Shown here piece by piece: positions 13,612 through 61,823 of a stretch of DNA of 64,000 bases. Source of the DNA: Heterodontus francisci (Eukaryota); NCBI RefSeq assembly GCF_036365525.1, contig NC_090404.1, forward strand, positions 5,952,001-6,016,000, written 5' to 3'. The translations under genes and the position numbers were made by a program. Numbering within the stretch: the first letter of the stretch is position 1; every line of letters begins with the position of its first letter. The notes beneath the pieces are model-generated. The model was not told the origin of the DNA. It searched no databases and saw nothing but the letters and a program-made list of their open reading frames with translations.

Positions 13612-13650
13612 AGTATTTGTCCAGCTCTCTCCGTGCTCTGTATCACTGTG
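13612..13650 (-). other. Second (distal) 23-RSS downstream of the supporting V
   Basis: CACAGTG(13650-13644)-23 bp-ACAAATACT(13620-13612). Confidence 0.85.
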
Positions 13651-13674
13651 TGTCTGTAATCCTCACCATGTTCA

Positions 13675-13713
13675 GGTTTTTGTACAGCTCCCTCCGTGCT
13701 CTGTATCACCGTG
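13675..13713 (-). other. Proximal 23-RSS of the supporting V
   Basis: CACGGTG(13713-13707)-23 bp-ACAAAAACC(13683-13675). Confidence 0.92.
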
Positions 13714-14019
13714 TTATGCGCCGACTCAGTGCACAGTAATACACAGCGGAGTCACTCAGTTGCAGTTTGGAAATTTTGAACCGGCTGATTTTCTCGGCAG
13801 GATCGATAGAAGCAGAAATTCGCCCCCCTACTGCGTTTTCTTTATTCTCCTCTCCTGAAGTGTGTCTCTGAAGCAGGTATTTCGGAGCCTGCCCAGGGGA
13901 CTGACGGTACCAGTGTACTGTGTACTGACAGAACCCTGAATATTCGCAGCTTAAAGTAACAGTGTCACCGGCAGCAGAGTGTTGTACAGGCGGACTCTTT
14001 GAGACCAAGGAACTGGAAT
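13714..14019 (-). CDS. NAR-TCR supporting TCR-delta V segment (no leader exon seen; extra Cys in CDR1)
   Basis: DSSSLVSKSPP...VTLSCEYSGFCQYTVHWYRQ...SDSAVYYCALS; acceptor ttggcag| at 14020 is in phase with the J donor at 18985; 23-RSS. Confidence 0.88.
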
Positions 14020-14804
14020 CTGCCAAATAAAAGTGAATATTATTAACTATTTAGACGCTGTTTACGCGGTGAAACTTGTCAATCGCAGGAATAGTTATTG
14101 TTTTCGCGGTAACTTGCTTCATTTGAAGCCTGTTGGAAATGTATTCACCGTTATTGAGATACGAACCAGTGCGGAGATGATGTGTATTTTATTTTGCACA
14201 GCGAGCTGTTATGATCTGGAATGCAATGTCAGAATGGGTGGTAGAAGCAGATTGATATTAACTTTCAAACAGGAATTGTATAATTGTTGAACCAGGAAAA
14301 AAAAATGCACGGGATATGGAGGAAAAGCAAGGGCTGCGGGAACAATTGGACAGCATCTACAAAGATGATGGGCCGAATGGCATCCCTCCATGTTGTATGA
14401 TTCAAAGATTCTATTACATTTCTGTGTCTATTTTTCTTGGTGGAAGTAAAACTGGAGGAAAAATTTTAATATCAGTGAGAGAATCACTTTCCAAAAATTG
14501 TTTGTCCGAGAGTATCCACCTGTGTTATATCACTACGCACAGGAAGATCCAACAGAGAGTAATGAAGTTCATCTGCGCAGACTGAGCGAAACTAATAGCG
14601 AACATCGGTTGTCAAATGTCAGTCGTTTACAACAGTTCAACACATCACGATTGCTCGCATTTCACTCCATTTGTCTACTTTCATCAATGGGGCCCAATTT
14701 TCTCCATTGCTCTTTAATTTGAAAAAGAATGCAGTTAGTTAAATTTTATTTCTACATTTACTTTGTGTTGTTTGAGGTTTTTTGCCATCATGGGAACTTA
14801 TACC

Positions 14805-14960
14805 GAAGTCTCTCAGTTGTCAGTTGGGTTCAGTTTGCGCAGTTTCCGCAGTGGTTTAACTGTTACTCACTGGGAACCTGCTCTTCCGGCTCTGTGACAA
14901 TTTCAATTCCTTCAGCTCATTGGTTGATTCTCTCCCGTGTTCTCCAAGCGGAGTTTTCTC
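14805..14960 (-). promoter_or_regulatory. Candidate germline promoter/enhancer in the J to supporting-V intron
   Basis: CCAAT (14923-14919), ETS-like CCGGAAG, TGAGTAA, AACCACT, CGGAAA; conserved in the inverted paralog at 10815-10975. Confidence 0.45.
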
Positions 14961-15269
14961 TGAGCTTTCTGTTGTACAGAATCTGCAGAACAGGAACAGG
15001 CCATTCGGCCTGTCCACTCCAACCACTCCACCTGGCAGCGAGATCCACATTCTGTCCTGTCTCTTGGTAAATGTATTCTGCTTAATTCATTTATTCCATC
15101 AGTGCCATCATATATTCGTGTCTCCTTATTCTGGATTCACCCACAAAAGAAATATTTTCGCCATGTCCAGCCGTCCATAATTTAAAAGACTTCCGTGAAG
15201 TATTCATATTATTCTTCATTTTCCAGGGGATAAAAAGCACAGCCTGTTCAAAATTTGCAGATGCTTGTT

Positions 15270-18984: not shown

Positions 18985-19075
18985 CGGATGAGACAATCAC
19001 CACCGTCCCGGATCCATCCACAGCACCAGATCGACGCACAGTGACACCGCTCCCAGTCAGGCCGGTACAAGAACT
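18985..19075 (-). CDS. NAR-TCR J segment (RRSGAVDGSGTVVIVSS) with 23-RSS
   Basis: Coding 19036-18985, G-x-G-T motif without F/W (IgNAR-J-like), donor G|GTAAGT; heptamer CACAGTG 19037-19043, 23-bp spacer, nonamer ACAAGAACT 19067-19075. Confidence 0.9.
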
Positions 19076-19382: not shown

Positions 19383-19451
19383 GGTATTTGTTCAGGTCTC
19401 TTCCACTGTGACCTCCCCAAAAACACAGTATTTCAAACCAACACAAAATCC
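19383..19451 (-). other. NAR-TCR D segment (TTTTTGGGGAGGT, 19423-19411) flanked by 12/12 RSSs
   Basis: ggtatttgt-12-cactgtg | 13 nt | cacagta-12-acaaaatcc; open in all three frames (FLGR, FWGG, FGE). Confidence 0.9.
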
Positions 19452-19779: not shown

Positions 19780-19817
19780 AGTATTTGTACCGCGGGAAGC
19801 CGAGGCCCATCACTGTG
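19780..19817 (-). other. RSS of NAR-TCR V (22-bp spacer, 23-type)
   Basis: CACAGTG 19817-19811, spacer 19810-19789, ACAAATACT 19788-19780. Confidence 0.9.
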
Positions 19818-20290
19818 TGTTTCTGTAGTACTCAGCTTTACAGTAATAGGTGGCGGTGTCTTCAACTCTCACATCCCGAATTTCCAGCGAAAATGTCCTT
19901 TTTGCCTTTACCGTCCTCACAACGAATCGCCCTCCGCTGGAGATCCGCTCCCGCTCTCTCCCGGTCGGGGTTTGTCTGAAGAAATATCCACTGTTTAAAT
20001 TATAAGCATAACCATGTAAAACACAGGTGATGGTGAGAGACTGACACTCCTTCCTGGTCACCGTTGCCGGGGTCTGTGTCACTGACTGACTGAAAGAGCC
20101 TGGAAATTAAACACAGAGAGTTTAATGGGCCATCAGAGCCGAACCACACAACGAGTTTAAAACCCTAGACAGTGTCTGTAATTCGGATGGACTCGGGCAG
20201 TTTTATATTAAATCCACACAATGTCGGTTTGTTTGCTCGGTACTCACGGGGTAAACAGACACACAGGGTGAAAACAAGGAGGATTCCCAT
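19818..20290 (-). CDS. NAR-TCR V segment: leader exon 20290-20248 (MGILLVFTLCVCLP) plus V exon 20099-19818
   Basis: SVTQTPATVTRKECQSLTITCVL...YFFRQ...ERISSGGRFV...FSLEIRDVRVEDTATYYCKA: IgNAR-like loss of CDR2, extra FR1 Cys, canonical splice sites, open frame. Confidence 0.9.
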
Positions 20291-32478: not shown

Positions 32479-32788
32479 CACTGTGAGACTCGGTGCACAG
32501 TAATAGACCGCGGTGTCAGACAGCCGCAGCTCCGAGATGGTCAATCAGTACAACTTGTCTGACTGCTGGACTGTATCAGAAAACCGGTCCTGAGCGAAAT
32601 CCGCCTTCAATTCATCACCGCCGCTCTTGTACCTCCGGACTGCAAACTCGAGCTGTCTGCCTGGGTATTGGCGAAACCAGAATAGGGTACCAGGGTACCG
32701 GGATAGGTGCAGGTTAAAGCGACATCTTCTCCCTCTGTCTGTGTGAGGGAGGATTCCCGCTGAATAACAGAATCTCCATCGCTCAGAT
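32479..32788 (-). pseudogene. TCR alpha/delta-type V pseudogene
   Basis: DSVIQRESSLTQTEGEDVALTCTY / frameshift / LFWFRQYPGRQLEF...KLY*LTISELRLSDTAVYYC; heptamer CACAGTG 32485-32479 with no nonamer at 23 bp. Confidence 0.85.
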
Positions 32789-33069
32789 CTGGAACACACG
32801 GATAAGTAAAGCGTGTATCGGCAGGGTAAGTTTGATGTCAGATCCACGGAGAGCAAACACTGTCAATTCAAACAGTTATATTGCTGCCTTTATCCTGGTC
32901 CAAAGCAACAGAGAACCGGCCTGGGAAACCTTGAGACTCAACTCCATACCCTGAGTTACACCGCCTCAGTAACTATCTTGGAGCTCGACGGAAAATAAAG
33001 AGAGTGTTATAGAATTGCCAGCGCTCTGTTAACTGCACAGGCGACGCAGGGTCAGGACCAGCCCCGGCA

Positions 33070-33586
33070 GGTTTGTGTACGGTCCCCACTGATCTTTGCT
33101 GCACTGTGCCTCCATCGCACAGAAATAGGTGGCAGTGTCTGTCACTCGAGTGTCACTCACAGTCAGAGTGCTGCGCTTCTCTGCTGCAATGAACCGAGCC
33201 GTGATCCTGTTCTGATCACTGGTACCGCTCGCCAGGTGCTGCACGGTTCGGTCCCGGTATTGTCTGTACCAATGTAGGATCAGTCCTCCGACTGTGGTGG
33301 AACAGGTCAACGATGCAGTGTCTCCCTCGATAACAGCCACTGACTCAGGAGACTGTGATACCTCTTCACTGCCAGCGGCATCTGAGAAAAAATATGGAAA
33401 TATAATATATAATTTATATAATAGAACACAATGTAACATAACGCAATAAAATACAACAGAACAGAATTCAATATAATATATAAATGTGTAAAATATTCCT
33501 GACAAACAGAGATAGTGACCACACTCACACAGAGGACAGAGTAAGAAATCCAGGGAGATAATAACTAAAGTGAAGTTCAGCTTCAT
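33070..33586 (-). CDS. Intact TCR alpha/delta-type V segment: leader 33586-33529, V exon 33381-33109, 23-RSS 33108-33070
   Basis: MKLNFTLVIISLDFLLCPL | EEVSQSPESVAVIEGDTASLTC...LHWYRQ...DTATYFCAME; CACAGTG-23-ACACAAACC; in-phase GT/AG. Confidence 0.88.
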
Positions 33587-33911: not shown

Positions 33912-35208
33912 ACAGGCCGCTGTGTCCCACCACTGATCATGTTAGCACAACGAACACTGACTAACATTAGTTTTTATAAATTAACAAGAGACTGATTTTC
34001 AACTCTTCGGTTTGTACTAACTAATATTATATTTTCAATTACACTACAACAATTTCACACATTACTTGACTGCAAATGAGCTGGTCAGGTCATGCTGACA
34101 ATTTCGAAATAAAATACATTTGCCATTGAGAATTGCAATTCGGAATAGGTTGGGATTTTTCTGTGTCATTCAACATCTGCTTTTACCCCCATAGCTTAAC
34201 CCAGCTGAATGGTGAAGTTATTTGTAGCTAAACAATAACGGTGCAAATCCTTTTCCCAGCCTGGGAGCAACACGGTTCTTATAGAGAAGTGGCGTTGCAT
34301 CATTTTCGATGAGTACATTACTACTGAAGTAATTTCCTCACACTTTTATTTTCTGTGTACTGTACAGATCAATGCTGCAAACAGTGGCAACAGATATTAT
34401 ATCCCGTGACACTGTCGATGTGAACATCCCCTGTAAAGAGACCTCCGAGTCATACGAGTGTCCCAGTGTTCTCCACTGCATTCCTTGCAAATCAGATCGC
34501 TTTCCAAGTCACCCCTAGCTATTTCAACACCACTCGAGTATTCTGCATTTTCTCCATTATCCTTACTTCTATACAATATTTTACAGGTTGTTACATTAAT
34601 CTGCTGTAAACAATTGTATTTTTTCCCCCTCGAGCGGGTTCAATGGGACCGGTAATGTTAATTTCTCCATTGTATTCGCTAGCCCGAGTGCCTTATAAGG
34701 TAAACGTTCTGACACATCGCTCACTCCGGTCAGCCCCACCAGAGAAGGAAGCCTCTGTCCCATTTGCCTGGATCAGATTTCAACACAGAGGCCAAGAGGC
34801 TGAAAGGTTGGCCGCGGACACAATGCGAGGAAATGGCTCCCTGCCATAGTGAACAGACAACAATCGCTTTTGACTTTCACCAAGTCCAACCAGATGAAAT
34901 ATTGGGTGTGTCGGTGAGAAACACGTCAGCCGTCTGATTATTGGATACTGAAGAGCAAACCTGGAAGAGGCGGCCGCCTTTGCCAGGTGCTGGCAAATTA
35001 AAATGTCGAGAAACGACTTACTCAGTGATGCAGGCAGATTCTGAAATAATTGATATTACCGTGATTTCAAAGCGGAATATCCTGAAATGCGATACATCCA
35101 TTTGGGACATTCAACATTTGATTCTCATGGGGCTATTCTGAATTAAGAAGGCTGGGTCGGAAAATAAAGCTTTTGCGAGTTTTCCATGTTTGTGTGTTGC
35201 TTTCACAG

Positions 35209-35510
35209 GGGTCCGTGGATGAGGGCGGGATATCCCGAACCAAGCACGTGACGGCTGTGGAGGGGCAAGCGGATCAAATCCGTTGCGATGCCATCACCCG
35301 ACACAATGTTTGGAATACCTGGTACCGTCAGTTACCGGACCCGGTGACGGAATTTATAATCTCAATCTATCAAGGTATAACAACTGACGAGAGCTGACAG
35401 TTTGGAGTGTTTCTCGACAGAAACAAAAGTTATAACACTTTCGGACGCCTGGGTGTATTACTGTGGGAAGATGTAAATTGCGGACAACGATGAGGCATCC
35501 TGTACAATTA
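35209..35510 (+). pseudogene. TCR-type V pseudogene
   Basis: VTAVEGQADQIRC...WYRQLP...FIISIY, stop, deletion, then SDAWVYYC; RSS degenerate. Confidence 0.7.
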
Positions 35511-36815: not shown

Positions 36816-37263
36816 ATGAACAGAAACCTCCGCAAAAACCGGGTTCCAGTTGGAGTTCTGGTGCTGCTGATGTTGTGTGAGTTTATTTATCTGATCAGAG
36901 ACTTTGTTTCACCAATCTCTTAATACCTTATGGTTGTTGAGTGATTTTGTTTTGTTCACAGCCGTTCTTTGTGAGGATCAGAGTTCACACCCTGAGCAGG
37001 TGGTGTCTCGGGAAGGGGAACGGGTTGAACTGGACTGCCGGCTCTCCATTGCTGCTGGGGATACAGTCGGCTGGTACAGAGAAACACTGACAGGGGCACC
37101 GACATTTACCAGGAGACTGAGACTACAGGACGCTAGACACCGTGCTTGGACCGAGTAAAATAGGTCTAACACCATCTCGAAAGATGACACCACAGCCCAA
37201 GACTGTATCACTGTGCCATGGGGACACAATGAGGCAAAGAGCGGATCCAGCTGCACAATATCT
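36816..37263 (+). pseudogene. TCR-type V pseudogene with leader (36816-36876) and 23-RSS (37225-37263)
   Basis: MNRNLRKNRVPVGVLVLLML|gtgagt; EQVVSREGERVELDC...VGWYRE, then frameshifts; CACAATG-23-ACAATATCT; CCAAT and TGACGTCT upstream (36606-36637). Confidence 0.75.
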
Positions 37264-37739: not shown

Positions 37740-38053
37740 CTGTTCCTTGTCACTCGGAGACATTCCAGATGTTGGTGCATCAAGGAACCGAAGGACAAAC
37801 CATTTCACTTCATCACAATGCTACTTTCACTACAGGTGATTCTATATTCTGGTACCGACAGTTCTCCAATCAAGCTCCCCAGTATCTCCTCTCCACATAC
37901 AGAGATGAGAGAGTTGAGGGAAGGTTTAAAATATCTGTGGACAGTGAGAAAGGCTCCACCACTCTCACCGTTAGTACGGCTCGGCTGTCAGATGCTGCGG
38001 TGTATTACAGTGCAGTGAGATACGGTGAAACAAAGTAATGATGTACAATTACT
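37740..38053 (+). pseudogene. TCR-type V with an open frame but both canonical Cys lost and a defective RSS
   Basis: EGQTISLHHNA...IFWYRQ...APQYLL...RLSDAAVYYSAVR; TACGGTG-17 bp-ACAATTACT. Confidence 0.8.
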
Positions 38054-42319: not shown

Positions 42320-45300
42320 GAGTCATATAGTCGTACAGTCCCTTCGGCCCACCGCGTCCATGAGAACCATAATGTCTATCTATACTAATCCCACCTACCT
42401 GCATTAATTCCATATCCCTCTATGCCTTGCTCATTCAAGTACCTGTCCAGATGCCTCTTAAATTTCGCTACTGTTCCTGCCTCCACCACCTCCTCAGGCA
42501 GCTCATTCCAGATACCCACTAATTTTTGTGTGAAAAATTTACCCTTTTGATCCCCTTTAAACCTCCTCCCTCTCACCTTAAATCTATGCCCTCTAATTTT
42601 AGTCATCCCTACCATGGGAAATAGACTCTGGCTATCTACCCTATCTATGCCTCTCATAATTTTATATACCTCTATCATGTCCCCTCTCAGCCTCCTTCGC
42701 TCCAGGGAAAACAGACCTAGCCTATCCAATCTCTCTTTATAACTCAAGCCCTCCAAACCAGGCAACATCCTTGTGAATCTTTTCTGCCCCCACTCTAGCT
42801 TAATCACATCTTTCCTGTAGTGCGGAGACCAGAACTGCACACAGTACTCCAAATGCGGCCTCACCAACGTTATGTAGAACTGTAACATGACGTCCCAACT
42901 CTTGTACTCAATGCCTCGGCCGATGAAGGCAAGCATGCCGTACACCTTATTCACCACCCTATCTACCTGTGTCGCCACTTTCAGTGAACTATGTACTTGC
43001 ATCCCAAGGTTTGTCTGCTCAACAACAGTCCCCAGGGCCCTGCCATACACTGTATATGTCCTGCCCTGGTTTAACTTCCCAAAATGCATCACTTCACACT
43101 TGTCTGCGTTAAATTCCATTTTCCAATCCCTTGCCCACTTTCCCCGTTGATCTATATCCTGTTGTAACCTTAGACAACCTTCTTCACTGTCCACTATACC
43201 ACCAATTTTGGTGTCATCTGCAAACTTACAAATTATGCCCCTTACATTCACATCCAAGTCATTAATATATATGACAAACAACAGAGGGCCCAGCACCGAT
43301 CCCTGCAGCACACCACTGATCACTGGCCTCCAATCTGAAAAACAACCCTCCACTACCACCCTCTGCCTCCTATCACCAAGCCAATTCTGTATCCAATTTG
43401 CTAATACACCCTGGATCCCATGTGCTCGAACCTTCTGGACCAGCCTACCATGCGGGACCTTGTCAAAGGCCTTGCTAAAGTCCATGTAGACAACGTCCAT
43501 CGCCCTGCCCTCGTCAATCCTCTTGGTCACCTCCTCGAAAAACTCAGTGAAATTCGTGAGGCATGATTTCCCACGCACAAAGCCGTGCTAACTATCCCTA
43601 ATCAGACCATGTCTTTCCAGATGCATATACATCCTGTCTCCCAAAATCCCTTCCAATAACTTTCCCACCACTGATGTAAGGCTCACTGGCCTGTAGTTCC
43701 CTGGCTTATCCCTGCTGCACTTCTTAAATAAAAGCACAACATTAGCTATCCTCCAGTCTTCTGGTGACTAACGATGATACAAAAATCTCTGCCAGGGCGC
43801 CAGCAATCTCCTCCCTTGCTTCCTATAGCTTCCTAGGATACACCTGCCAGGCCCTGGGGATTTATCCAGCTTAATGTGCTTCAAAACCTCCAACACCTCC
43901 TCTTTTGTAATGTCGATGTGCTCCAGGATATCGCTGTTCCATCCCTTGAACTCACTAGCTTCTATGACCTTCTCCACGGTAAATACGGACGAGAAATATT
44001 CATTTAAGACCTCGCCCATTTCCCGTGGCTCCACACATAGATTGCCACACTGATCCTTAAGGGGGCCTACTCTCTCTCTAGCGACCCTTTTACTCTTAAT
44101 ATACTTATAGAATCTGTTAGGATTCTCCTTTATCTTATCTGCCAGGGAAATCTCATGGCCCCTTTTCGCCCTCCTAATTTCCTTCTTACGTGTAGTCCTA
44201 CATCCCCTTTGCTCCTCGAGGGACTCGCTCGATCCCAGCCACCTATACCTGACATATGCCTCCTTCTTCGTCCCGACCAGACCCTCAATATCCATCGTCA
44301 ACCAAGGTTCCCTAAACTTGTCAGCCTTTCCCTTCCATCTAACAGGAACATGCCGGCCCTGAACTCTTCCGATCTCACTTTTAAAAGCCTCCCACTTTCC
44401 AGACGTCCCTTTACCTGTAAACAGCCTCTCCAATTCAACTTTTGAGAATTCCTGTCTGATGCCATCGAAATTAGCCTTCCCCCAATTTAGGACTTCAACC
44501 TGAGGACCAGTCCTATCCTGTTCCATAACTATCTTGAAGCTAATAGAGTTATGGTCACTGGTCCCAAAGTGCTCCCCCACTGACACATCAACCACCTTCC
44601 CATGCTCATTTCCTAAAAGGAGGTCGAGTGTAGCCCCTTCTCTCGTAGGGCCATCCACATACTGCTTCAGAGAACTATCCTGGACACACTGAACAAATTC
44701 TTCCCCATCTGATCCCTTAGCACTAAGGCAGTCCCAGTTAATATTAGGGAAGTTAAAATCACCTATTACAACCCTATAATTCCTACACCTATCTGTGATT
44801 TCCCTACATATATGCTCCTCCACTTTCCTCTGCCTATTGGGGGGCCTATAGTATAATCCCATCAAAGTGATCACCCCTTTCTTATTTCTAAGTTCTACCC
44901 ATATAGCCTCACTGGACATTCCCCCGGGGATATCCTCTCGAAGTACTACCGTGCTGTTCTCCCTAATCAATAGTGCAACTCCCTCTCCTCTCTTACCTCC
45001 ACCTCTGTCACGCCGGAAGGATCGGTACCCCGGAACATTGAGCTGCCAGTCCTGCCCATCCCTCAACCACGTTTCCGTAATAGCTACAATATCACAATCC
45101 CATATTCCGATCCATGCTCTGAGTTCATCTGCCTTACCTGTAAGGCTTCTTGCATTAAAGTAAATGCAGTTTAGCCTATCAGGCCTTCCACGCTCCCTGT
45201 CCTGCCCCTGCCCGGCCTGCCTACTGGACTTGCTTGCTTTAACCTCAACTATCTCTTCAGAGAGACTACTACTTTGGGTCCCACTCCCCTGCAAGACAAG

Positions 45301-46000
45301 TTTAAACCCTCCCGAGTAGTACTAGCAAACCTCCCCGCAACGATATTGGTCCCCTTCCAGTTTAGATGCAACCCATCCTTCTTGTACAGGTCACCTCTGC
45401 ACCAGAAGAGATCCCAATGATCCAAGTAGCTGAAGCCCTCCCGCCTACATCAGCTCTTCAGCCACGCATTCATTTGCCTAATCCTCCTATTCCTACCCTC
45501 ACTAGCACGTGGCACAGGGAGTAATCCTGAGATTACAACCCTAGAGGTCCTGCTTTTTAACCTTCAGCCTAACTCCCTATATTCACTTTGGAGGACCTCA
45601 TCTCTCTTCCTACCTACGTCGTTAGTACCAATATGGACCACGACCTCTGGCTGCTCACCCTCCCCTTTCAGAATGTCCTGCAGCCACATAGAGACATCCT
45701 TGATCCTAGCACCAGGGAGGCAACATACCATCCTGGAGTCTCGTTTGTGACCACCGAAACGCCTATCTGCACCCCTTACGATAGAATCCCCTACCACTAT
45801 AGCTCTTCCAACCTTTTTCCTCCCCTGCTGTGAAGCAGAGCCCCCCCATGGTGCCACGAACTTGGCTGTTGCTGCATTTCCCCCCAACAGTATCCAAAGC
45901 GGTGTATCTGTTTGAGAGGGGGATGGCCACAGGGGACACCTGCACTACCTGCCTGCGCCTACTACTCCGTCTGGTGGTCACCCATCTCTTTACTGCCTGT
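42320..46000 (-). mobile_element. Near-full-length CR1 (esterase ORF1 remnant, endonuclease, RT)
   Basis: ORFs 45564-45887 (GDSIVR, HIGTND), 43768-45294 (APE endonuclease), 42385-43578 (RT). Confidence 0.93.
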
Positions 46001-47899: not shown

Positions 47900-50800
47900 C
47901 ATAAGCCATGTAACGGGGCAACGGGTACAGCAGAAAAGGTGGAGAAAGAGAGTCCACATGTGCATAACAGCAAAGTGGAGTGTGTGTGTCTGGCACAACA
48001 GGTGGAGAGAGTGGGGTTTGTGTGTAGAAGAGAAAATGTGAAGATTCTGGACATCTGCTAAGGGCTGGACAGGAACCTGGAGTGGGAAGGGGCGGGGATC
48101 CAGTTGTTGTCGTCCATGTAGGTACCAACGACATAGGTAGGACCAGCAAAGAGGTTCTGCTTAGACCGTATGAGGAGCTAGGCAAAAACCTGAAGAGCAG
48201 AAGCTCAAGAGTAATAATCTCTGGATTATTAACTGAGCCACGTGCCAATTGGCAGAGGGCACATAAGATTATTGAAATGAATACGTTGTTCAAAGACTGG
48301 TGTGAAAGAAGTAGGTTTCGGTTCGTGGTGCATTGGCACCAGTAATGGGGAACGTGGGAGCTGGACCAATGGGACGGTCAGCACCTGAACAGTGCTGGGA
48401 CCAGTGTTCTAGCAAACTGCATAACTAGGGAAGCAGAGAGGGCTTTAAACAAACAAGAGAGGTGAGGGATCAAGCTTCAGTAGATGTAGCAAACAAGGGG
48501 TAGAGTCAAGACAGGAGAGCAGAATAATAATATGGGAAATGAAGGTCAGAGAATGGCGGGAAGGGCAGAGAGGAAAAAAACTAAGAACAGACCAACAGTC
48601 AAGACTGGATGTTACAAAGAAAACAAAAAGACAAAACTAAACGTTTTGGATCTGAATGCACATAGCATTCATAACAAAATAGACGAACTGAAATCGCACA
48701 CTGAAGTAAATAAATATGATCCTGATAGACATTACGGAGACGTGGCTGCAGGATGACAAGGATTGAGTCCTGAATATTGAGGGGTATATGACATTCAAGA
48801 ATAGGAAGCTAGACAAATGTGGAAGGGTAGCACTGTTAATCAGGAATGGCATTGGTGCAATAGTTAGAAATGACCTTGGTACAGGAGATCAGGATGTAGA
48901 ATCGGGTTGGGGAATAGTAGGGGAAGGAAGTCACGAGTGGGAGTGGTCTACAGGCCCCCTAACAGTAACCACAACGTAGGACGAAGTATATAAGAAGAAA
49001 TAGTGGGTGCTTGTAATAAGGGGACGGCAATAATCATGGGTGATTATAATCTGCATATTAACTGCAAAAATCAGATTAGCAATAGCACCCTGGATGAGGA
49101 GTTCATAGAATGCTTTCGAGATAGTTTGTTAGAGCAGCACGTTCTGGAAACAACCAGAGAGCAGGTTATATTAGACTTGGTATTGTCTAATGTGACAGGA
49201 TTAATTAATGACCTATGAGTGAAGGCACCTCTAGGTAGCAGCGACCACAATATGATTGAAGTTTACATCCAGTTTGAAGGAGAGAGGAGTGGGTCTATAA
49301 CTAGTATTTCAAACTTAAATAAGAGCAACGATGTGGGCATGAAAGCTGATCTAGCTGAAGTGAACTGGGTTCCTAGGCTAGGAGATAGATCAACAGAGAA
49401 GCAGTGGCAGACAATAAAGGGGATATTTCAGAATACTCAGATTAAGTATATCCCTACTATAAAGAAAAATTCTAAGGAGAGGACCCACCATCCGTAATTA
49501 ACTAAAGAGGTTAAGTAAAGCATCAAAATTAAGGAAAACGCATGTAATTGTGCAGAGATGAATGGCAGGTCAAATGATTGGTCAGAATATAAAGAACGGC
49601 AGGGAATGACTAAGAGGTTAATGAGGAGAAATAAATTAGAGTATGAGAGGAAACTAGCTAGAAATATGAAAACGGATAGCCAAGCGTTTCTACGGGTATT
49701 TAAAAAGGAAAAGAGTAAGTAAAGTAAGTGTTGATCCTCCAGAGAGTGAGAATGAGGAGTTAATAGTAGATAGTAAGGAAATGGAAAGATGAAATGAACA
49801 AATATTTTGCTTCTGTCTTCACTATAGAGGATACAAAATGCATTCCAGTAATAGTTGTAAATCAGGAGGTGGAAGGAAGAGAGGAACTTGGTGAAAGTCC
49901 AATCACCAGGGAAGCGGTACTGAGCAAACTGATGGAGCTGCGCGAAAACAAGTCCCCGGGACCTGATGGAATTCATCCCAGGGTCTTAAAAGAGGTGGCT
50001 AATGAGGTAGTCGATGTTAATTTTTCAAAACTTGCTAGATTCTGGAAAGGTTCCATCAGACTGGAAAGTAGCAAATATAACCCCTCTATTCAGGAAGGAA
50101 CGGGGTGGAGGGGGGGGGGGGGCGCGGGGTGGTAGGTGGTGGTGGTGGTGGGGTAGGCAGAAAACAGGTAACGATAGGCCAGTTAGCTTGACGTCTGCCA
50201 TGCGGAATGTTTTAGAATCGATCATGAAAGTGATTAAAGCTGGGCACTTAGAGAAATTCGAGATAATTGGGAATAGTCAGCATGGCTTTGTGAAAGGGAG
50301 ATCATGTTTCACCAATTTATTGACGTTCTTTGAAGGCGTAACATGTGCTGTGGCTGAAGGGGAGCCTGTTGACGTACTGTACGTGGACTTCAGAAGGCAT
50401 TTGACAAGGTGCCACATGAAAGGTTATTGCACCAAGTAGAGCTCATGGTGTAGGGGGAAACTTATTAGCATGGATAGAAGATTTGCTGGCTGGCAGAAAA
50501 CAGATGAGACAAATATAGGTAGGCAGTGGCGTAGTGGTATTATCACTGGACGAGTAACCCAGAGACCCAGGGTATTTCTCTGGGGACATGGGTTCGAATC
50601 CCACCACAGCAGAAGGTGGAATTTGAATTTAATTAATAAATCTGGAATTAAAAGCTAGTCTAATGATGGCCATGAAACCATTGTTGATTGTTGTAAAAAA
50701 ATATCTGGTTCACTAATGTTTAGGGAAGGAAATCTGCTGTCCTGACCTGGTCTGGCCTACATGTGACTCCAGACCCACGGCAATGTGGTTAACTCTTACA

Positions 50801-53800
50801 TGCCCTCTGAAATGGCCCAGCAAGCCACTCAGTTGTACCTAACCGCTATGAAGTCAATAAAAAGGAATGAAACCGGACGGACCACCCGGCATCCACCTAG
50901 GCACTGGAAACGACAACGGCAAACCCAGCCCTGTCGACCCTGCAATGTCCTCCTTGCTAACATCTGGGGGCTTGTGCCAAAGTTGGGAGAGCTGTCCCAC
51001 AGACTAGTCAAGCAACAGCCTGACATAGTCATACTCACGGAATCATACCTGACAGACAATGTCCCAGACATTGCCATCACCAGAGGTGGTGGCACAGTGG
51101 TATATAGTAGGGAGGAAGTTGCCCTGGGAGTCCTCAACATCGACTCTGGACCCCACGAAGTCTCATGGCAACAGGTAAAACATGGGCAAGGTAACCTCCT
51201 ACTGATTACCACCTACTGCCCTCCCTCATCTGATGACTCAGTACTCCTCCATGTTGAACACCACTTGGAGGAAGCACTGAGGGTGGCAAGGGCACAAAAT
51301 GTACTCTGAGTGGGGGACTTCAATGTCCATCACCAAGAGTGGCTCGGTAGCACCACTACTGACCGAACTGGTCGAGTCCGAAAGGACATAGCTGCGAGAC
51401 TGGGTTTGAGGCAGGTAGTGAGGGAAGCAACATGAGGGAAAAACATACTTGACCTCGTCCTCACCAATCTGCCTGCCACAGATGCTTCTGTCCATGACTG
51501 TATGAGTAGGAGTGACCACCGCACAGTCCTTGTGGAGCCGAAGTCCCGCCTTCACATTGAGGATACCGTCCATCGTATTGTGTGGCACTACCACGGTGCT
51601 AAAGGGGATAAATTTCGAACAGATCTAGCAATGCAAAACTGGGCATCCATGAGGCGCTGTGGGACATCAGCATCAGCAAAATTGTACTCAACCACAATTT
51701 GTAACCTCATGGCCCGGCATATCCCCCATTCTATCATTACCGTCAAGCCAAGAGACCAACCCTGGATCAATGAAGAGTTCAGGAGGGCAGCATGCCAGGA
51801 GCAGCACCAGGCATACCTATAAATGAAAGCAAAATACTGCGGATGCTGGAAATCTGAAATAAAAACAAGAAATGCTGGAACCACTCAGCAGGTCTGGCAG
51901 CATCTGTGGAAAGAGAAGCAGAGTTAACGTTTCGGGTCAGTGACCCTTCATCAATGAGGTGTCAACCTGGTGAAGCTACAACACAGGACTATCTGCGTGC
52001 CAAACTGCGTAAGCAGCATGCGATAGACAGAGCTAAGCGATCCCATATCCAACGGATCAGATCTAAGCTCTGCAGTCCTGCCACATCCAGCCATGAATGG
52101 TGGTGGACAATTAAACAACTAACTGGAGGAGGTGGTTCCACAAATATCCCCATCCTCAATGATGGGGAAGCCCAGCAAGTCAGTGCAAAAGATAAGGCTG
52201 AAGCATTTGCAACAATCTTCAGCCAGAAGTGCCGAGTTGATGATCCATCTCAGCCTCCTCTTGAAGTCCCCAGCATCACAGATGCCAGACTTCCGCCAAT
52301 TTGATTCACTCTGCGTGATATCAAGAAATGACTGAAGGCACTGGATACTGCAAAAGCTATGGGCCCTGACAATATTCTGGCAATAGTACTGAAGACCTGT
52401 GCTCCAGAATTTGCCGCGGCCCTCGCCAAGCTGTTCCAGTACAGCTACAGCACTGGCATTTACCCTGCAATGTGGAAATTTGCCCAGGTATGTCCTGTAC
52501 ACAAAAAGCAGGACAAGTCCAACCCGGCCAATGACCGCCCCATCAGCCTACTCTCAATCACCAATAAAGTAATGGAAAGTGTCATCAACAGTGCCATCAA
52601 GCGGCACTTGCATAGCAATAACCTGTTCAGTGACGATCAGTTTGGGTTCCGCCAGGGCCACTCAGCTCCTGACCTCATTACAGCCTTGGTTCAAACATGG
52701 ACAAAAGAGCTGAACTCAAGAGGTGAGGTGAGAGTGACTGCCCTTGACATCAAGGCAGCATTTGACCGAGTATGGCATCAAGGAACCCTAGCAAAACCGA
52801 GGTCAATGCGAATCAGGGGGAAAACCCTCCGCTGGCTGGAGTCATACCTAACGCAAAGGAAGATGGTTGTGGTTGTTGGAGGTCAATCATCTGAACATCA
52901 CTGCAGGAGTTCCTCAGGGTAGTGTCCTAGGCCCAACCATATTCAGCTGCTTCACCAAAGACCTTCCTTCAATCATAAGGTCAGACGTGGGGATGTTCGC
53001 TGATGATTGCACAATGTTCAGCAGCATTCGTGACTCCTCAGTTACTGAAGCAGTCCATGTAGAAATGCAGCAAGACCTGGACAATATCCAGGCTTGGGCT
53101 GATAAGTGGCAAGTAACATTCGCGCCACACAAGTGCCAGGCAATGACCATCTCCAACAAGAGAGAATCTGACCATCTCCCCTTGACATTCAACGGCATTA
53201 CCATCGCTGAATCCCCCACTATCAACATCCTAGGGGCTACCATTGACCAGAAACTGAACTGGAGTAGCCATATAAATACTGTGGCTACAAGAGCAGGTCG
53301 GAGGCTAGGAATTCTGAGGCGAGTAACTCACCTCCTGACTCCCCAAAGCCTGTCTACCATCTACAAGGCACAAGTCAGGAGAGTGATAGAATACTCTCCA
53401 CTTGCCTGGATGGGTGCAGCTCCAACAACATTCAAGAAGCTCAACACCATCCAAAACAAAGCAGCCCGCTTGATTGGCACCCCATCTACAAACATTCACT
53501 CCCTCCACCACCAACGCACAGTGGCAGCAGTGTGTCCCATCTACAAGATGCACTGCAGCAATGCACCAAGGCTCCTTAGACAGCACCTTCCAAACCCGTG
53601 ACCTCTACCAACTAGAAGGACAAGGGCAGCAAATACATGGGAACACCAACACCTGCAAGGTCCCCTCCAAGTCACACACCATCCTGACTTGGAACTGTAT
53701 CGCCGTTCCTTCACTATCGCTGGGTCAAAATCCTGGAACTCCCTCCTAACAGGACTGTGGGTATACCTACCCCAAATGGACTGCAGCAGTTCAGTAATGC

Positions 53801-56371: not shown

Positions 56372-56654
56372 TCACTTGACCTGTAAAAGAGGAATAAAAG
56401 AATGAAGCAGAGATATCGTGGTACGGGAAATTCATCTCAGAGTATTTTCTTTGATCTATGAAAGTTTTAGAGATTTGTTTAACAGCTTATGTCAAATTGA
56501 AGTGTGAGTGGATTGAATATTCTCACCTTCACCAGAGTGACGGCAGCGCTGTAGAAAATGCTCAGGAGGAACAGGATGATGAATGTGGAAGCAGTTGTCC
56601 AGATGTTGCCGCTCTCTTCCTCATTGTCTTCAATCCAGATGTGGTCTGAGGAAT
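56372..56654 (-). CDS. IGHM: IgM transmembrane exons TM1 (56654-56527) and TM2 (56380-56372)
   Basis: DSSDHIWIEDNEEESGNIWTTASTFIILFLLSIFYSAAVTLVK | VK*; antigen-receptor TM motif; canonical splice sites. Confidence 0.9.
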
Positions 56655-57239: not shown

Positions 57240-57500
57240 TCTGGCGTTTTTGTTTGTGTGCCTTGGTGCTTGTGTATGTGTGTATGAGTATCTTTTGCTT
57301 TGCATTTCTCTGTGTTTGTGCATCCAAGTGTGCGTGTGTGTGAGTGTTAATGAGTGTGTTTGTTTGTTTGTGTACACAAGTGTGGGTGTATTAATGTTCT
57401 TGTTTCTATGTTGATGGCTTGGGTATGTGTCCATTCATGCTCATGTGTGTTAAGGTGACAATGTGCATTGATGTGTGTATTCAACTGACCGCATGTGTGT

Positions 57501-57538
<38 letters not shown>

Positions 57539-58190
57539 TGTGTCGATCTGTCGATATGTGTATGAGCGTGTCAATATCTGTTTGTGTGTGTTTGTGTCCC
57601 GATGAGTTTGCTATTCTGTGTTGATGGATGCGTTTATGGGTCCCTGTAATTTAGTGTGTGTTTATCTGTCAATACATGTATATGGGTGCTTTAATGTGTT
57701 TGTTGAGATGTGTTTGTGTCCCCATAAGTGTGATAATGTGTATGTTTATGCGTTGATATCTGCATTTATGCATTAATGTGTATGTTATTTTGTGGTTATG
57801 CGCACATGTGTGTTATTGTATGTGTTTATGTGTGTGTTTGTGTATATATGTGTGTGTGTCAGTATATTGATGCTGGTGTTTATTTGTGTGTGTGAGTGCG
57901 TTAATGTGTCTATTTATCTATGTATTTGCGTGTACGTGTGTGTGTCTGTTAATGTGCGTCCATCTATATGTCAATGTGTTTTTTAGTGTGTGATTTTATG
58001 TCAATGTTTTTGTGTACGTGAGACTGTACTCAGATGTGTGTTTATGATTATGTTTATGTGTGTGACGGTGGGAGCATTTATATCAGCGTTTGTGCCTGTT
58101 CCCGTGTGTAGGTGTATGTGTGTGTTTCTGCATGTGAGCGTGTTTATGTATATGATTGTATCTGTGTGCCTCTGCATTTTTGTTATTTTT
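57240..58190. repeat. Degenerate (TG)n-rich tract in the CH4-TM1 intron
   Basis: Long imperfect GT dinucleotide run. Confidence 0.9.
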
Positions 58191-59209
58191 CAATTTTCCA
58201 CAGAGAACCAATAACCGGGTCTGGCCTTGGACGATGTGCTTGTAGAGAATATTCTTCACCGTTTAGTGTATAAATGTATTCTGTGCGAGATGCAATGTGA
58301 CATCAGCTGAATACACGCAGCAATGCAACTGATGGGCCTCAGAAACGTCAGGAACACAAGTGTGAATAAAAGAGGAGGATTCTGTCATCAGTTAGATTTG
58401 GATTATTCGAATTCGATCTGTTCGCATAAGATTAACAGGGAAAAGTTTAAAGATATTGTATTGCATATATATTTTACAATATGATTCCCACGTGGAAAGC
58501 TTAAAATCTTCGCACAGTGAGCTGGAAGCCGACTTTGTACGGATGGCCATTGAGTCCATGTAATGGAGAGTTGCCTTCTCATCTCTTTGTCGGGTGAGTG
58601 GGAATGGGTTAACAAATATCTTTGCTCCTTCCTCAGTTGGAGAAATTGGGGAGAGGGGCTACAGTCGGTTCACAATTGCATTTTCCCCCTCTCTATTGGA
58701 GAATTGGAGTTACAGTGGATGAACTATTGCCCTTTTCCTGTCTCTGTTTAGGAAGTGGGGTCACAGTGGGTTAACAATTTGCTCTTTCCACTCTTTCTGT
58801 TAGGCGATTAAGGGTATAGTTCATATTCATGTGTCGCCTTCACTTCAGTTCCCAGTGCTTCATATGCTGCAACTTTAAACTGATCCCAATTCTTAAGGGA
58901 TGTACAACACGAGAAACAGGGACACCGAGATCGAAATGCCTGTGTTTGTTGGAAAAGGGAAAATTTCAGACATCGCCCTACGGAGGAAAAGTTACTGAAG
59001 TTACTCGACGGAATCCTCACACGAATCAGCTTTCCTCTGTCGCTCACCTGTGGTGTATCTGAGCTGGGAGCACTGGTTGTACAAGACTTGGGCCGGAAAT
59101 CTGCAAATAGATGAATAGACCTATCTTTAAAAATGTGGAAAGCAAAATTAATTGAGCGGTTGTGTATTTAAATCATGATTTGAAAGAAGAGGTCTTTACT
59201 GGTTTTTAT

Positions 59210-59601
59210 TTAAGATTGAAATGCAATCGTGTCCAACAGTGCAAGGGAAATGTTCACAAAACTCGGTTTACCACTGGATTTATTAACTGTTCTGTTGATG
59301 ATCTTCAAGGGGATCGCTTCATGTCCCACCACACAGGAGTAAGAAGCGCCGCTGGTCCACTCCTCCGCTGCAATGGATAACAGGCTGTAGATGAAGAAGG
59401 AGCTCTTGTCGTTCTCCGCCATCACCTCGGTGTTCTTGTAGTTGCCAGGATTCACCGACTTGTCATTGACGGTCCACTTGACGAAGATCTCTCGGGGGGA
59501 GAAACCTCTCACTAAGCAGGTGAGGGAGAGGAACCTCTGAGCGGAGACTTCTTCTGCCGGGGGCAGGAGGACAGACACGGACGGCTCCCGCAGATTTTCA
59601 A
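59210..59601 (-). CDS. IGHM: IgM CH4 exon plus secretory tail (tail Cys absent)
   Basis: [38 protein letters not shown]...[11 protein letters not shown]...SG|[19 protein letters not shown]; internal donor G|GTAAAC at 59272; AATAAA overlapping the stop. Confidence 0.92.
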
Positions 59602-60102
59602 CTGCAGAAAAATTAAAATAAGTGTCAATAAACTGGAGAATTCCAGAGACAATAAAATCGGTGGTTAGATGTGAGAGGAATATGATTTGTGCTGAATTTT
59701 TAAAGGTTTTCCTCTTCCCCTCTGGGGTCTGCCCTGTTGTCCAGCCCGGAACAGAGGCGGATGCAACCCTTCTCTCTGAGAACTTAAGGGGTTAGACTGG
59801 AAAATTACATAGCATTTGCAGCACAGGAACAGGCCATTCGGCCCAACTAGCCTGTGCTGGTGTTTACGCTTCACACGAATCACCTTCCACATTACTTCAT
59901 CTCTTTCTATTCTTTTTCTCTCATTCACTTATCTAGTTCCCCCTTAAATATATCACCTCTGGTTCCAGAGGGCTTCCTTAATAAACATACAATTAAATTA
60001 TCAGAGGAATCCATTGGACCACTTAATAGATCGAATCGGTCCTTGCACAAACAAAGGAAATACGTACAATCTCTCACTTATTGCTTCAATCTCACCGCTC
60101 AC

Positions 60103-60400
60103 CTCCTTCCTTGTGGATGGATTGAGAGGGGTCGGCAGATCTTGATGGCTCACCACGCAGAAGAACTCAGCCCCACTCAGCCAAGCTTGTGTCGAGATGC
60201 TAATGGTGCTGATCACACTGTCGAGATCCTCCCCGGGTTGGACGGCAATCTCTGATTCCAAAGGCTCCTTTTCTTGTGTCCAGGACACGTTAATTCCATA
60301 AAGGAGCATTAAACACGACGCAGGTTAACGTCATCGCCGCCGCCAGTAAGACCTGTTCTATTGATGCTTGCAGTTGAGTAATTACTGGGTCACTGCACAG
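60103..60400 (-). pseudogene. IGHM: IgM CH3 exon, frameshifted, 5' end abutted by a repeat insertion
   Basis: CSDPVIT...SIEQVLL...[10 protein letters not shown] / +1 / [10 protein letters not shown]...[20 protein letters not shown]; repeat at 60401-60570. Confidence 0.85.
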
Positions 60401-60684
60401 TGTTAACATTTCAGGTCCGTGACCTTTCATCAGAACGTTCAATGAAAGGTCACAGACCTGAAAGGATATATCTGTTTCTCTCTCCTCAAATGCTGCCCGA
60501 CCTGTTGAGTATTTCCAGTACTTGCTGTTTTATTTCAGATTTCCAGCATCCTCAGTATTTTGTTTTTATTTCAATTTGCTGGTGCCTTGTTACGATATTT
60601 GCGGAGATGAAAATGTGTAGGAACCAGTCACCTCATGTGTAAGTCTGGAGTCAGAAGGAGACCTGACCATCGGGCAGTAACAGC

Positions 60685-61245
60685 AACATAGGAAAAAGGA
60701 ATAGGCCATTCAGCCCCTCATGCCTGTTCCGCCATTCAATTAGATGATGGCGAACTCGATCGTATTTCCATATTTCTCCCCTTAATAACTTTGCCTAACA
60801 AACATCTACCAATCTCAACATTGATATTTTCAATTGATGCCAAACTTCAAGAGCGACGTGGGGGAGAGAATTCCAGATTTTCGCTACCCACTGTGTGAAT
60901 AGTTACTTCCTGAATGACCTTGGTCTCATTGAAGGTTATGTCCCCTTGTTCTGGAGACCCACACCAGAGGAAATATTTTTCTCCATTTACTCCATCAATT
61001 CCAGTAACCATCTTAAACATCTCAATTAGATCACCCTTTAGTCTTATATACTTGAAACCTGTCCTCATAATTAAACCCGTTCAGCTCCGCTATCATTCTA
61101 GTGAAGCTGCTTTGCAACACCCCCATGCCAATATATTCTTCCTGAGCTCCGGAGCCCAGAACTGAACACAGTTTTCTAAATAGGGTAGATGCTCTTTTTG
61201 GTACTTGATCCCAAGGCTGTTGCCAGTAATGGGTTCCAGACACCT
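60685..61245 (-). mobile_element. Old CR1 3' fragment in the CH2-CH3 intron
   Basis: RLKGDLIEMFKMV motif. Confidence 0.7.
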
Positions 61246-61504
61246 ATTGCCGCTCCGTCCGCTCAGGATAAACCTGATATCAAGGTCACCTCACTCGATA
61301 TCTAAGTAGAGGAAACATGTGATGTGATGACATGCTCAGCCGTGAGCAATCCTAATTCAGTACCTACAGCGGAATGAAGCATAAAAACTGCATGATGGTA
61401 AATTGGACATTATTCTGTGCTTCGTCCGAATGCCAGTATATTCATCTCTTTGATTAACATGGAGCACAGAATGATCTGGAGCTTTCTCAGTTTGTGTCTC
61501 TTAC

Positions 61505-61823
61505 CCGGAGATCCGGTGATGTTTCGGCTTTGGGTGACCCCTTGATGGGAGACCTGGCAGGTATAGACCGTGTTGGTGAACCATTCCCCAGCGGGGACTG
61601 TCAGCCGACTGGTCGCTGAGATGTTCCCGTTCACTTCAAAGGCAGAAGAGGTGACGAAGCCCGAATCCATGGGTTGTCCATCCTTCAACCAACTCACGGT
61701 TATTGGCTCTGGATGGAAATCGATGATTTGAACACACGACAGTTGCAAATCTGCTGCTTGTGATTTCTTCACTGGAACTCAGGGTGAGGATAATAGTTTG
61801 ATGGACGATATCACTTGGAAGAT
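61505..61823 (-). pseudogene. IGHM: IgM CH2 exon, frameshifted
   Basis: [21 protein letters not shown] / +1 / [17 protein letters not shown]...[37 protein letters not shown]; donor G|GTAAGA. Confidence 0.88.

What the first reader, a model, noticed from the sequence alone, without database searches (positions are those of the whole stretch)
13612..61823. IgM constant exons physically linked to TCR alpha/delta V segments and NAR-TCR, in the same orientation
Seen: IgM CH2-CH4 and TM exons end about 18 kb from the nearest TCR-type V and about 36 kb from the NAR-TCR V, upstream of it on the same (minus) strand. Known: sharks make IgH V-TCR-delta chimeric rearrangements, and IgH segments have been reported inside the shark TCR alpha/delta locus. 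Inference: this is a disabled IgM cluster embedded in a TCR V array. Its VH/D segments (expected beyond position 64000) could be donated in cis to TCR-delta, making this a hybrid B/T-cell receptor locus.
Basis: partly seen in the sequence, partly recalled or inferred. Interest (0 to 1): 0.8.

Follow-up and report, generated by a model that had tools for sequence, protein, structure and literature searches.

The report
Dead IgM gene beside shark TCR V genes
A broken shark IgM antibody constant-region gene lies on the same DNA strand as, and 18-36 kb from, T-cell-receptor V gene segments including a complete NAR-TCR unit; this mixing of antibody and T-cell-receptor genes is real here but was already published for other sharks and rays in 2025.

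Summary
IgM CH2, CH3, CH4 with secretory tail, TM1 and TM2 lie on the minus strand at 61823-56372. The nearest TCR-type V ends 18.3 kb away. A complete NAR-TcR cassette lies 36 kb downstream on the same strand.

The IgM gene is dead:
- a 1-nt insertion in CH2, absent from expressed paralogs;
- a frameshift in CH3;
- a SINE-like repeat replacing the native 5' end of CH3;
- loss of the tailpiece cysteine.

No CH1, VH, D or JH lies in the window, and no RNA contig shown carries this copy's own letters.

Seven V-type segments are present. Three are intact, all on the minus strand: NAR V, its leaderless supporting delta V, and one classical TCR alpha/delta V. Four are pseudogenes.

The proposed cis donation of VH to TCR delta could not be tested, because the flanks were out of reach.

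Close linkage of IgM, IgW and IgNAR clusters to TCR alpha/delta, with TCR-type V exons between the IgH clusters, was published in 2025 (PMC12227049). This scan has already noted several similar places elsewhere in this genome. I read this as a further local example, of low interest.

The parts
61505..61823 (-). IgM CH2 exon, frameshifted. It has one extra base in the A-run 61727-61729, just after the first Cys codon (61734-61732).
   Evidence: Two reading frames are needed. Pfam C1-set 1.4e-14. At 61727 one letter is left out in 1 DNA contig and in 25, 22 and 6 RNA contigs of three runs.
60096..60397 (-). IgM CH3 exon remnant. A frameshift at about 60301-60303 is followed by a stop at 60292-60290. 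The native acceptor and first codons are replaced by the end of a repeat.
   Evidence: Frames. Alignment with the CH3 part of P0005. A DNA contig lies on 60075-60431 with 0 differences. The RNA loose end at 61507 shows that paralog CH3 starts differently.
60403..60571 (-). SINE-like repeat abutting the 5' end of CH3.
   Evidence: Six other copies in the window at 82-86% identity. DNA contig depth is 70,000-145,000 against about 9 for unique sequence.
59210..59601 (-). IgM CH4 exon with secretory tailpiece. The ORF is open, but the tail lacks the penultimate Cys. The cryptic TM donor is at about 59272, and a polyA signal overlaps the stop.
   Evidence: Pfam C1-set 2.2e-21. PDB C-mu-4 plus tailpiece. 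All 4 homologs that reach the C-terminus end in ...VN(S/A)CQ, while the window ends ...IAFQS. Paralog reads diverge at 59229.
56527..56654 (-). IgM TM1 exon, open.
   Evidence: Translation. RNA joints 56655 to 59274/59277 and 56378/80 to 56525/27.
56372..56380 (-). IgM TM2 exon (two codons and the stop).
   Evidence: RNA joint in three runs.
61982..62627 (.). 33-bp minisatellite, 19.7 copies, directly 5' of CH2. No CH1 lies between it and the window end.
   Evidence: TRF score 919. No C-domain hit in 61.9-64 kb.
19780..20290 (-). NAR-TcR leader (20290-20248), V exon (20099-19818) and RSS with a 22-bp spacer.
   Evidence: It has a Cys in the a-b loop and Phe in place of the canonical Trp.
19404..19451 (-). 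NAR-TcR D (19423-19411), flanked by 12-bp-spacer RSSs on both sides.
18985..19075 (-). NAR-TcR J (19036-18985) with a 23-bp-spacer RSS and a phase-1 splice donor.
13612..14019 (-). Leaderless supporting TCR delta V (14019-13714). It has a splice acceptor, a Cys in CDR1 and two tandem 23-RSSs (heptamers at 13713 and 13650).
   Evidence: Pfam V-set 4.3e-17.
33070..33586 (-). Intact TCR alpha/delta-type V: leader 33586-33529, V exon 33381-33109, heptamer CACAGTG, 23-bp spacer, nonamer.
   Evidence: Pfam V-set 1.2e-11.
32479..32790 (-). TCR-type V pseudogene (frameshift and in-frame stop). The heptamer is kept and the nonamer is poor.
35200..35470 (+). V pseudogene (stop and frameshift, no RSS).
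36816..37235 (+). V pseudogene with a leader (stop, truncated FR3).
37742..38020 (+). V pseudogene with an open frame but both canonical Cys lost and a degenerate RSS.
   Evidence: Pfam V-set 6.7e-8. Its full-length PDB alignments are to TCR alpha chains.
42385..45887 (-). LINE (endonuclease and reverse transcriptase) in the interval between the V segments and the IgM exons.
   Evidence: Pfam Exo_endo_phos and RVT_1.
50785..53601 (+). Second LINE in the same interval.
   Evidence: Pfam RVT_1.

Best explanation
This is a decayed relic of a shark-type IgM heavy-chain cluster: CH2, CH3, CH4/secretory tail, TM1 and TM2, with CH1 and V-D-D-J not in the window. It sits in the large chromosomal neighbourhood where cartilaginous fishes keep IgH miniclusters interleaved with TCR alpha/delta-type V segments.

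Downstream on the same strand lie one rearrangeable classical TCR alpha/delta V and one complete germline NAR-TcR unit (leader-V, D, J, then a leaderless supporting delta V). These would join by deletion to TCR D/J/C elements lying beyond the window's low-coordinate end.

Shown here:
- the anatomy, orientation and distances;
- the lesions of the IgM gene;
- the intactness and RSS geometry of the TCR elements.

Inferred: the IgM relic is inert, a product of birth-and-death turnover of IgM clusters. It plays no part in the neighbouring TCR segments' recombination.

Neither shown nor excluded: that a VH upstream of it can still be used by TCR delta.
For: IgM identity: Pfam C1-set on all three C ORFs. 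CH4 plus tail aligns to C-mu-4 plus tailpiece. It is 60-84% identical to shark and chimaera IgM fragments.

Lesions:
- CH2 needs two reading frames. Expressed paralogs lack one base at 61727.
- CH3 needs two frames and runs into a stop. That site and the repeat/CH3 junction stand in a 357-nt DNA contig with 0 differences.
- A repeat with six other copies in the window ends 5 nt from the CH3 remnant.
- The tail Cys is present in 4 of 4 homologs that have a tail and is absent here.

No sign of expression:
- RNA-contig depth is zero in the introns.
- At 56370, 56568 and 56593, in each run that shows the difference, every contig carries the other letter (X7 shows none at 56370). At 59356 about 99% of the depth does.

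TCR side:
- The RSS scan found 8 sites against a mean of 1.06 (maximum 4) in 50 shuffles. Seven of the 8 flank the annotated NAR-TcR, supporting-V and classical-V segments. None lies in 56-64 kb.
- All NAR-TcR hallmarks listed in PMC1845163 (passages read) are present.

[quoted passage not shown] IgM pseudogene clusters are known in nurse shark (PMC5192425 passage).
Against: - All laid runs come from one sample, probably the one the assembly was made from, and all are contigs. The lesions are therefore not confirmed in an independent individual or technology.
- For the CH2 site, no unique-depth DNA contig spanning it was among the pieces shown.
- No laid contig shows the CH3 indel relative to paralogs. 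That frameshift rests on reading frames and one homolog alignment.
- Contigs cannot prove absence of transcripts.
- CH1 could lie beyond 64000, so 'relic without V-D-J' is not established.
- A scan note places an IgM VD-J gene 17.5 kb beyond the window end. Its strand is unknown to me, and it might belong to these C exons.
- The word search for relatives of the intact V found nothing. Its TCR alpha/delta typing rests on PDB matches alone.
Confidence: 0.8

Rival explanations
1. The C exons belong to a functional IgM cluster. On this view the frameshifts are assembly or consensus errors, and V-D-D-J-CH1 lie just beyond the window.
For: - CH4, TM1 and TM2 are open.
- Exon identity to expressed paralogs is 95-99%.
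- Both frameshifts sit in short homopolymer runs.
- A scan note reports an IgM VD-J gene 17.5 kb beyond the window end (unchecked).
Against: - The CH3 frameshift site and the repeat junction are reproduced in a separate contig assembly of reads.
- The tail Cys loss is a substitution, not an indel.
- The native CH3 5' end is replaced by a repeat.
- No RNA contig shown carries this copy's letters.
- Four independent lesions are unlikely to be errors.
Confidence: 0.07
2. The juxtaposition is an assembly artefact: IgM-cluster sequence and TCR V sequence were joined through the LINE-rich 38-56 kb interval.
For: The interval holds at least two long LINEs and several fragments. No long-read tiling was done here.
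Against: - There is no N in the window.
- The same kind of juxtaposition is noted at many other places of this genome by this scan (unchecked).
- It is also published for four other species (PMC12227049).
Confidence: 0.03
3. The relic is still used. On this view a VH upstream of it on the minus strand joins by deletion to TCR D-delta, or to the NAR-TcR D/J, so the locus works as a cis donor of Ig V domains to TCR delta.
For: - Same-strand order: IgM, then TCR V, then NAR-TcR.
- The NAR-TcR D carries 12-RSSs on both sides and the J a 23-RSS. Any V with a 23-RSS is therefore formally compatible.
- IgM/IgW V to TCR delta rearrangements are reported in nurse shark (cited in PMC5931798 and PMC12227049 passages).
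Against: - No VH, D-H or JH in the window.
- No TCR D-delta, J-delta or C-delta in the window.
- No chimeric transcript was examined.
- The C gene being dead suggests a decaying cluster whose V may be gone too.
Confidence: 0.1

Closest known systems
Elasmobranch antigen receptor complex: IgM/IgW/IgNAR miniclusters linked to TCR alpha/delta (Flajnik et al., Sci Adv 2025, PMC12227049)
   Same: IgH constant exons and TCR alpha/delta-type V exons lie on one contiguous stretch. TCR-type V segments lie next to IgH clusters, and NARTCR V is in the same region.
   Different: [quoted passage not shown] It never uses 'pseudogene', 'orientation', 'Heterodontus' or 'horn shark' (0 occurrences each).
- Its coordinates are in table S1, which I could not see.
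- Here the IgM member is a dead relic, and exon-level anatomy and strands are given.
NAR-TcR, the doubly rearranging TCR delta of cartilaginous fish (Criscitiello et al. 2006; features as listed in PMC1845163)
   Same: - Leader plus NAR-type V with a Cys in the a-b loop and no canonical Trp.
- Its own D and J.
- A leaderless supporting delta V with a Cys in CDR1.
   Different: Nothing essential. The J-to-supporting-V intron is about 5 kb and holds LINE fragments, and the supporting V has two tandem 23-RSSs.
Shark IgM pseudogene clusters (three in nurse shark, per the review PMC5192425)
   Same: An IgM cluster member inactivated by frameshifts.
   Different: Here only CH2-TM is visible. CH1 and V-D-D-J are not in the window, and a repeat has replaced the start of CH3.
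TAILV / VH segments inside TCR delta loci (Deiss et al. 2019, known to me only through its citation in PMC12227049)
   Same: Ig-derived sequence inside TCR alpha/delta territory.
   Different: TAILV are Ig-like V segments used by TCR delta. Here the Ig-derived part is constant-region exons, and no VH-like V was found.

Membership tests
Shark IgM heavy-chain cluster gene | Four C1-set constant exons, CH1-CH4 | tested here: inconclusive
   CH2, CH3 and CH4 were found. No CH1-like hit lies in the 2.2 kb upstream of CH2. CH1 may lie beyond the window.
Shark IgM heavy-chain cluster gene | CH4 followed by a secretory tailpiece with a penultimate Cys | tested here: not met
   The tailpiece is present and aligns to IgM tails. 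Cys is replaced by Phe, whereas 4 of 4 homologs with a tail keep it.
Shark IgM heavy-chain cluster gene | TM1/TM2 exons spliced from a cryptic donor inside CH4 | tested here: met
   Donor, TM1 and TM2 are present. RNA-contig joints fall at these sites, though from paralogs or this copy.
Shark IgM heavy-chain cluster gene | Open reading frame through all C exons (functional member) | tested here: not met
   Frameshifts in CH2 and CH3. It is therefore filed as a pseudogene.
Shark IgM heavy-chain cluster gene | Own VH-D1-D2-JH upstream | not testable with these tools
   There is none in the window. The flank could not be fetched.
NAR-TcR | NAR-type V with a leader, a Cys in the a-b loop and no canonical Trp (PMC1845163) | tested here: met
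   for the sequence; the best hits are VNAR domains.
NAR-TcR | Own D and J with RSSs, and a J ending in a splice donor | tested here: met
NAR-TcR | Associated delta V without a leader and with a Cys in CDR1 | tested here: met
   the splice acceptor directly precedes FR1, a Cys lies in CDR1, and a 23-RSS follows.
TCR alpha/delta V gene segment | Split leader, V-set domain with both Cys, 23-bp-spacer RSS, closest to TCR V-alpha/delta | tested here: met
   Met for the segment at 33586-33070. Not met for the four pseudogenes. No named shark homolog was found.
IgH/TCR alpha-delta antigen receptor complex (PMC12227049) | IgH cluster genes and TCR alpha/delta V on one chromosome stretch | tested here: met
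   Both lie in one gap-free 64-kb window.
IgH/TCR alpha-delta antigen receptor complex (PMC12227049) | Linkage to TCR alpha/delta constant genes and PSMB5 | not testable with these tools
   Neither is in the window, and the flanks are out of reach.

The most novel reading that the evidence does not exclude
The NAR-TcR cassette here has Ig-type RSS geometry: a 22/23-bp-spacer RSS on the V, 12-bp-spacer RSSs on both sides of the D, and a 23-bp-spacer RSS on the J. It lies downstream, on the same strand, of IgM-cluster DNA.

A VH surviving upstream of the dead C exons could therefore join by simple deletion to the NAR-TcR D/J instead of to its own D. It would then be spliced onto the leaderless supporting delta V. 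The product would be a two-V TCR delta chain capped by a VH rather than a NAR V.

On this reading the dead C gene would be the footprint of an IgM cluster being converted into a V donor for TCR delta.
Probability: 0.04. Interest if true: 0.6.

Novelty: new member of a known kind. Interest (0 to 1): 0.2.

Why it matters
This locus adds one exon-level example of how IgM clusters decay in place inside the shared IgH/TCR alpha-delta region of cartilaginous fishes. It shows a complete, apparently usable NAR-TcR unit within 36 kb of Ig constant exons on the same strand. That fits the published idea that proximity allowed V-domain traffic between Ig and TCR delta.

It opens no new question. Whether physical linkage actually drives VH-to-TCR-delta joining still needs repertoire data mapped to individual clusters.

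Tried and rejected
- **Named shark homologs of the intact V.** The word search found no candidate and the Atlas could not read the sequence. The typing rests on PDB matches.
- **Flanks.** I tried to fetch them through the look-up of encoding contigs, using the zinc-finger ORF. CH1/VH to the right and TCR D/J/C to the left therefore remain unseen.
- **Papers.** I tried to read Deiss 2019, Criscitiello 2010 and Criscitiello 2006. None is held. What I say of them comes from citations in other papers or from recall. Supplementary table S1 of PMC12227049 (gene coordinates) was not seen and could bear on how close IgM and NARTCR V lie in other species.
- **First reading of the CH2 lesion.** I first took it for an extra T after the Cys codon. 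The read alignment places the extra base in the following A-run, and I adopt that.
- **Tail end.** I considered that it was frameshifted. Comparison with the paralog read ends shows substitutions plus a missing codon instead.
- **CH1 hidden in 61.9-64 kb.** tblastn with CH2-CH4 found nothing there at E below 1, although it cross-detects CH2, CH3 and CH4 among themselves at about 1e-4 to 1e-5.
- **Big protein search.** I did not run the search of protein representatives. The family scans left nothing open.
- **Spliced model.** The spliced IgM model was never joined. Exons were searched apart.
- **Species.** Other agents' notes name horn shark. I could not check this, because organisms were coded.


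Full report
**What is there**

The window is 64,000 bases without any N. Three ORFs on the minus strand between 61.8 and 59.2 kb are immunoglobulin C1-set domains. Their Pfam E-values are 1.4e-14, 6.2e-4 and 2.2e-21.

The last ORF carries a secretory tailpiece. Against solved structures, its residues 4-118 align to C-mu-4 plus tailpiece of IgM chains, with a best stretch of 100.8 bits. The first ORF aligns best to the second constant domain of mu and epsilon chains.

Two small exons follow downstream. They encode a typical IgM membrane anchor: TM1 at 56654-56527 and TM2 at 56380-56372.

The word search returned 8 proteins among 30 candidates. They include fragments from Chiloscyllium punctatum and an 'immunoglobulin heavy chain IgH' of Callorhinchus milii. 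I aligned 5 of the 8, and they are 60-84% identical to the CH4 exon.

**State of the IgM gene**

It is broken in at least four ways.

1. CH2 needs two reading frames. Laying contigs of one DNA run and three probable RNA runs on 56300-62299 shows one letter left out at 61727. This is seen in 1 DNA contig and in 25, 22 and 6 RNA contigs. Expressed paralogs therefore lack a base that this copy has, in the A-run just after the first Cys codon.
2. CH3 also needs two frames and runs into a stop at 60292-60290. The domain's Cys-to-Trp spacing is restored only if one base near 60301-60303 is ignored, as the CH3 part of P0005 suggests. A 357-nt DNA contig of unique depth (9.9) lies on 60075-60431 with no difference. 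The lesion is therefore not an artefact of the assembly's consensus alone.
3. RNA contigs that end at the CH2 donor continue into a CH3 start that differs from the window (loose end at 61507). In the window, the bases just upstream of the CH3 remnant are the end of a repeated element at 60571-60403. That element has six other copies in the window and a DNA contig depth of 70,000-145,000. The native acceptor and first codons of CH3 have been displaced.
4. The tailpiece ends ...IAFQS. All 4 aligned homologs that reach the C-terminus end ...VN(S/A)CQ. Read ends from paralogs diverge from the window at 59229. The cysteine used for polymer formation is lost by substitution.

CH4, TM1 and TM2 remain open.

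**Expression**

RNA-contig depth is huge on the exons and zero in the introns (56700-58899 and 61100-61299). At 56370, 56568 and 56593, in each run that shows the difference, every contig carries the other letter. X7 shows none at 56370. At 59356 about 99% of the depth does.

The signal therefore comes from paralogs. I saw no sign that this copy is transcribed.

Caveats:
- Contigs drop rare variants and cannot prove silence.
- All four runs are from one sample, probably the assembly's own.
- No laid contig shows the CH3 indel relative to paralogs.
- No unique-depth DNA contig over the CH2 site was among the pieces listed.

**Upstream of CH2**

The 2.2 kb up to the window end holds a 33-bp minisatellite (61982-62627, 19.7 copies, with a short second block at 62818-62920) and LINE-tail sequence.

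It holds no C-domain hit and no RSS. Within the window there is thus no CH1, JH, D or VH.

Unchecked notes of this scan place an IgM VD-J gene 17.5 kb beyond the window end and IgM TM exons 34 kb beyond it. The spacing fits a separate plus-strand cluster better. I cannot exclude that the VD-J belongs to the C exons here.

**The TCR side**

I found seven V-type segments. Three of the 7 are intact, all on the minus strand.

- **Classical V.** A split-leader V at 33586-33109 has a perfect heptamer, a 23-bp spacer and a good nonamer. Its best single-domain PDB hits are TCR V-alpha chains and a TCR delta chain.
- **NAR-type V.** The leader is at 20290-20248 and the exon at 20099-19818. Its best PDB hits are VNAR domains, at 4.3e-19.
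- **Supporting V.** A leaderless V at 14019-13714 is entered through a splice acceptor.

Between the last two lie a 13-nt D (19423-19411) with 12-bp-spacer RSSs on both sides. A J (19036-18985) follows, with a 23-bp-spacer RSS and a phase-1 donor.

The hallmarks listed in PMC1845163 (passages read) are all met:
- a leader on the NAR V;
- a Cys in the a-b loop;
- no canonical Trp;
- an associated delta V without a leader;
- a Cys in the CDR1 of that delta V.

This is a complete germline NAR-TcR unit.

The other 4 of 7 V segments are pseudogenes:
- about 32790-32486 (minus): frameshift and stop;
- about 35200-35470 (plus): stop and frameshift;
- 36816-37235 (plus): stop and truncation;
- 37742-38020 (plus): both Cys lost. 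Its full-length PDB alignments are to TCR alpha chains.

My RSS scan found 8 sites against a mean of 1.06 (maximum 4) in 50 shuffles. Seven of the 8 flank the intact segments named above. One, at 33700, is unassigned.

**Distances, order and the interval between**

From the end of TM2 (56372) to the nearest V (38020-38035) is 18.3 kb. To the NAR leader (20290) it is 36.1 kb. The IgM exons lie upstream of the NAR-TcR unit on the same strand.

The interval 38-56 kb is rich in LINEs, with endonuclease and reverse-transcriptase ORFs. I did not test its contiguity with long reads.

**How it most likely works**

The intact minus-strand TCR elements carry the RSSs needed to join, by deletion, to D/J elements lying beyond the low-coordinate end of the window. 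This is inferred, because no TCR D-delta, J or C is in the window.

The IgM relic has no RSS-bearing element in view and a dead coding region. I take it to be an inert remnant of cluster turnover.

It is formally compatible with the strand order and with the 12/23 rule. Nothing here supports it directly.

**What is known**

PMC12227049 (Sci Adv 2025; abstract and sections 6 and 15 read) reports the following:
- Some TCR alpha/delta-type V exons lie between the IgH clusters.
- NARTCR V is mapped in its Figure 1.
- The proximity 'easily supports' IgM/IgW VH to TCR delta rearrangements.

IgM pseudogene clusters are known in nurse shark (PMC5192425 passage).

The paper's main text never uses 'pseudogene', 'orientation', 'Heterodontus' or 'horn shark'. 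Its coordinate table is a supplement that I could not see.

This scan's own notes describe several similar IgM/TCR-V juxtapositions elsewhere in the same genome. One is another IgM constant-region relic about 2.6 Mb away (unchecked).

**Verdict**

The arrangement is a further example of a published layout.

I rate the interest low (0.2) and the novelty as a new member of a known kind.

Noticed in passing
window 250-1176 (+): An open 308-aa ORF made of about eleven C2H2 zinc fingers (Pfam zf-C2H2 3.2e-62) lies at the left edge of the window, next to the TCR V region. I did not determine whether it is a gene or part of a larger model.
   Followed up: no
window 61982-62627 and 62818-62920: A 33-bp minisatellite (19.7 copies, 86% matches) lies directly upstream of the IgM CH2 exon. 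DNA contig depth there is about 1,100-1,300 against about 9 for unique sequence, so the unit recurs elsewhere in the genome.
   Followed up: partly
window 19404-19451 and 18985-19075 (-): The NAR-TcR D carries 12-bp-spacer RSSs on both sides and the J a 23-bp-spacer RSS. By my recollection this is the geometry of shark IgH clusters rather than of classical TCR delta.
   Followed up: partly
window 13612-13713 (-): The supporting delta V is followed by two tandem 23-bp-spacer RSSs, with heptamers at 13713 and 13650. Another note on this window records the same thing.
   Followed up: partly
window 33700 (-): A perfect heptamer with a 22-bp spacer and a weak nonamer lies about 110 bp upstream of the intact V's leader. 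No V-like coding sequence is in front of it. It may be chance or the last trace of another V.
   Followed up: partly
window 21704-25659 (+) and 42385-45887 (-): Two long LINE copies carry largely open endonuclease and reverse-transcriptase ORFs. The first also has a GDSL-esterase-type ORF1. They may be young elements.
   Followed up: no
window 57200-58200: The CH4-to-TM1 intron holds about 1 kb of CA-rich low-complexity sequence. Contigs appear cut at 57489-57545 and 57816-57867.
   Followed up: no
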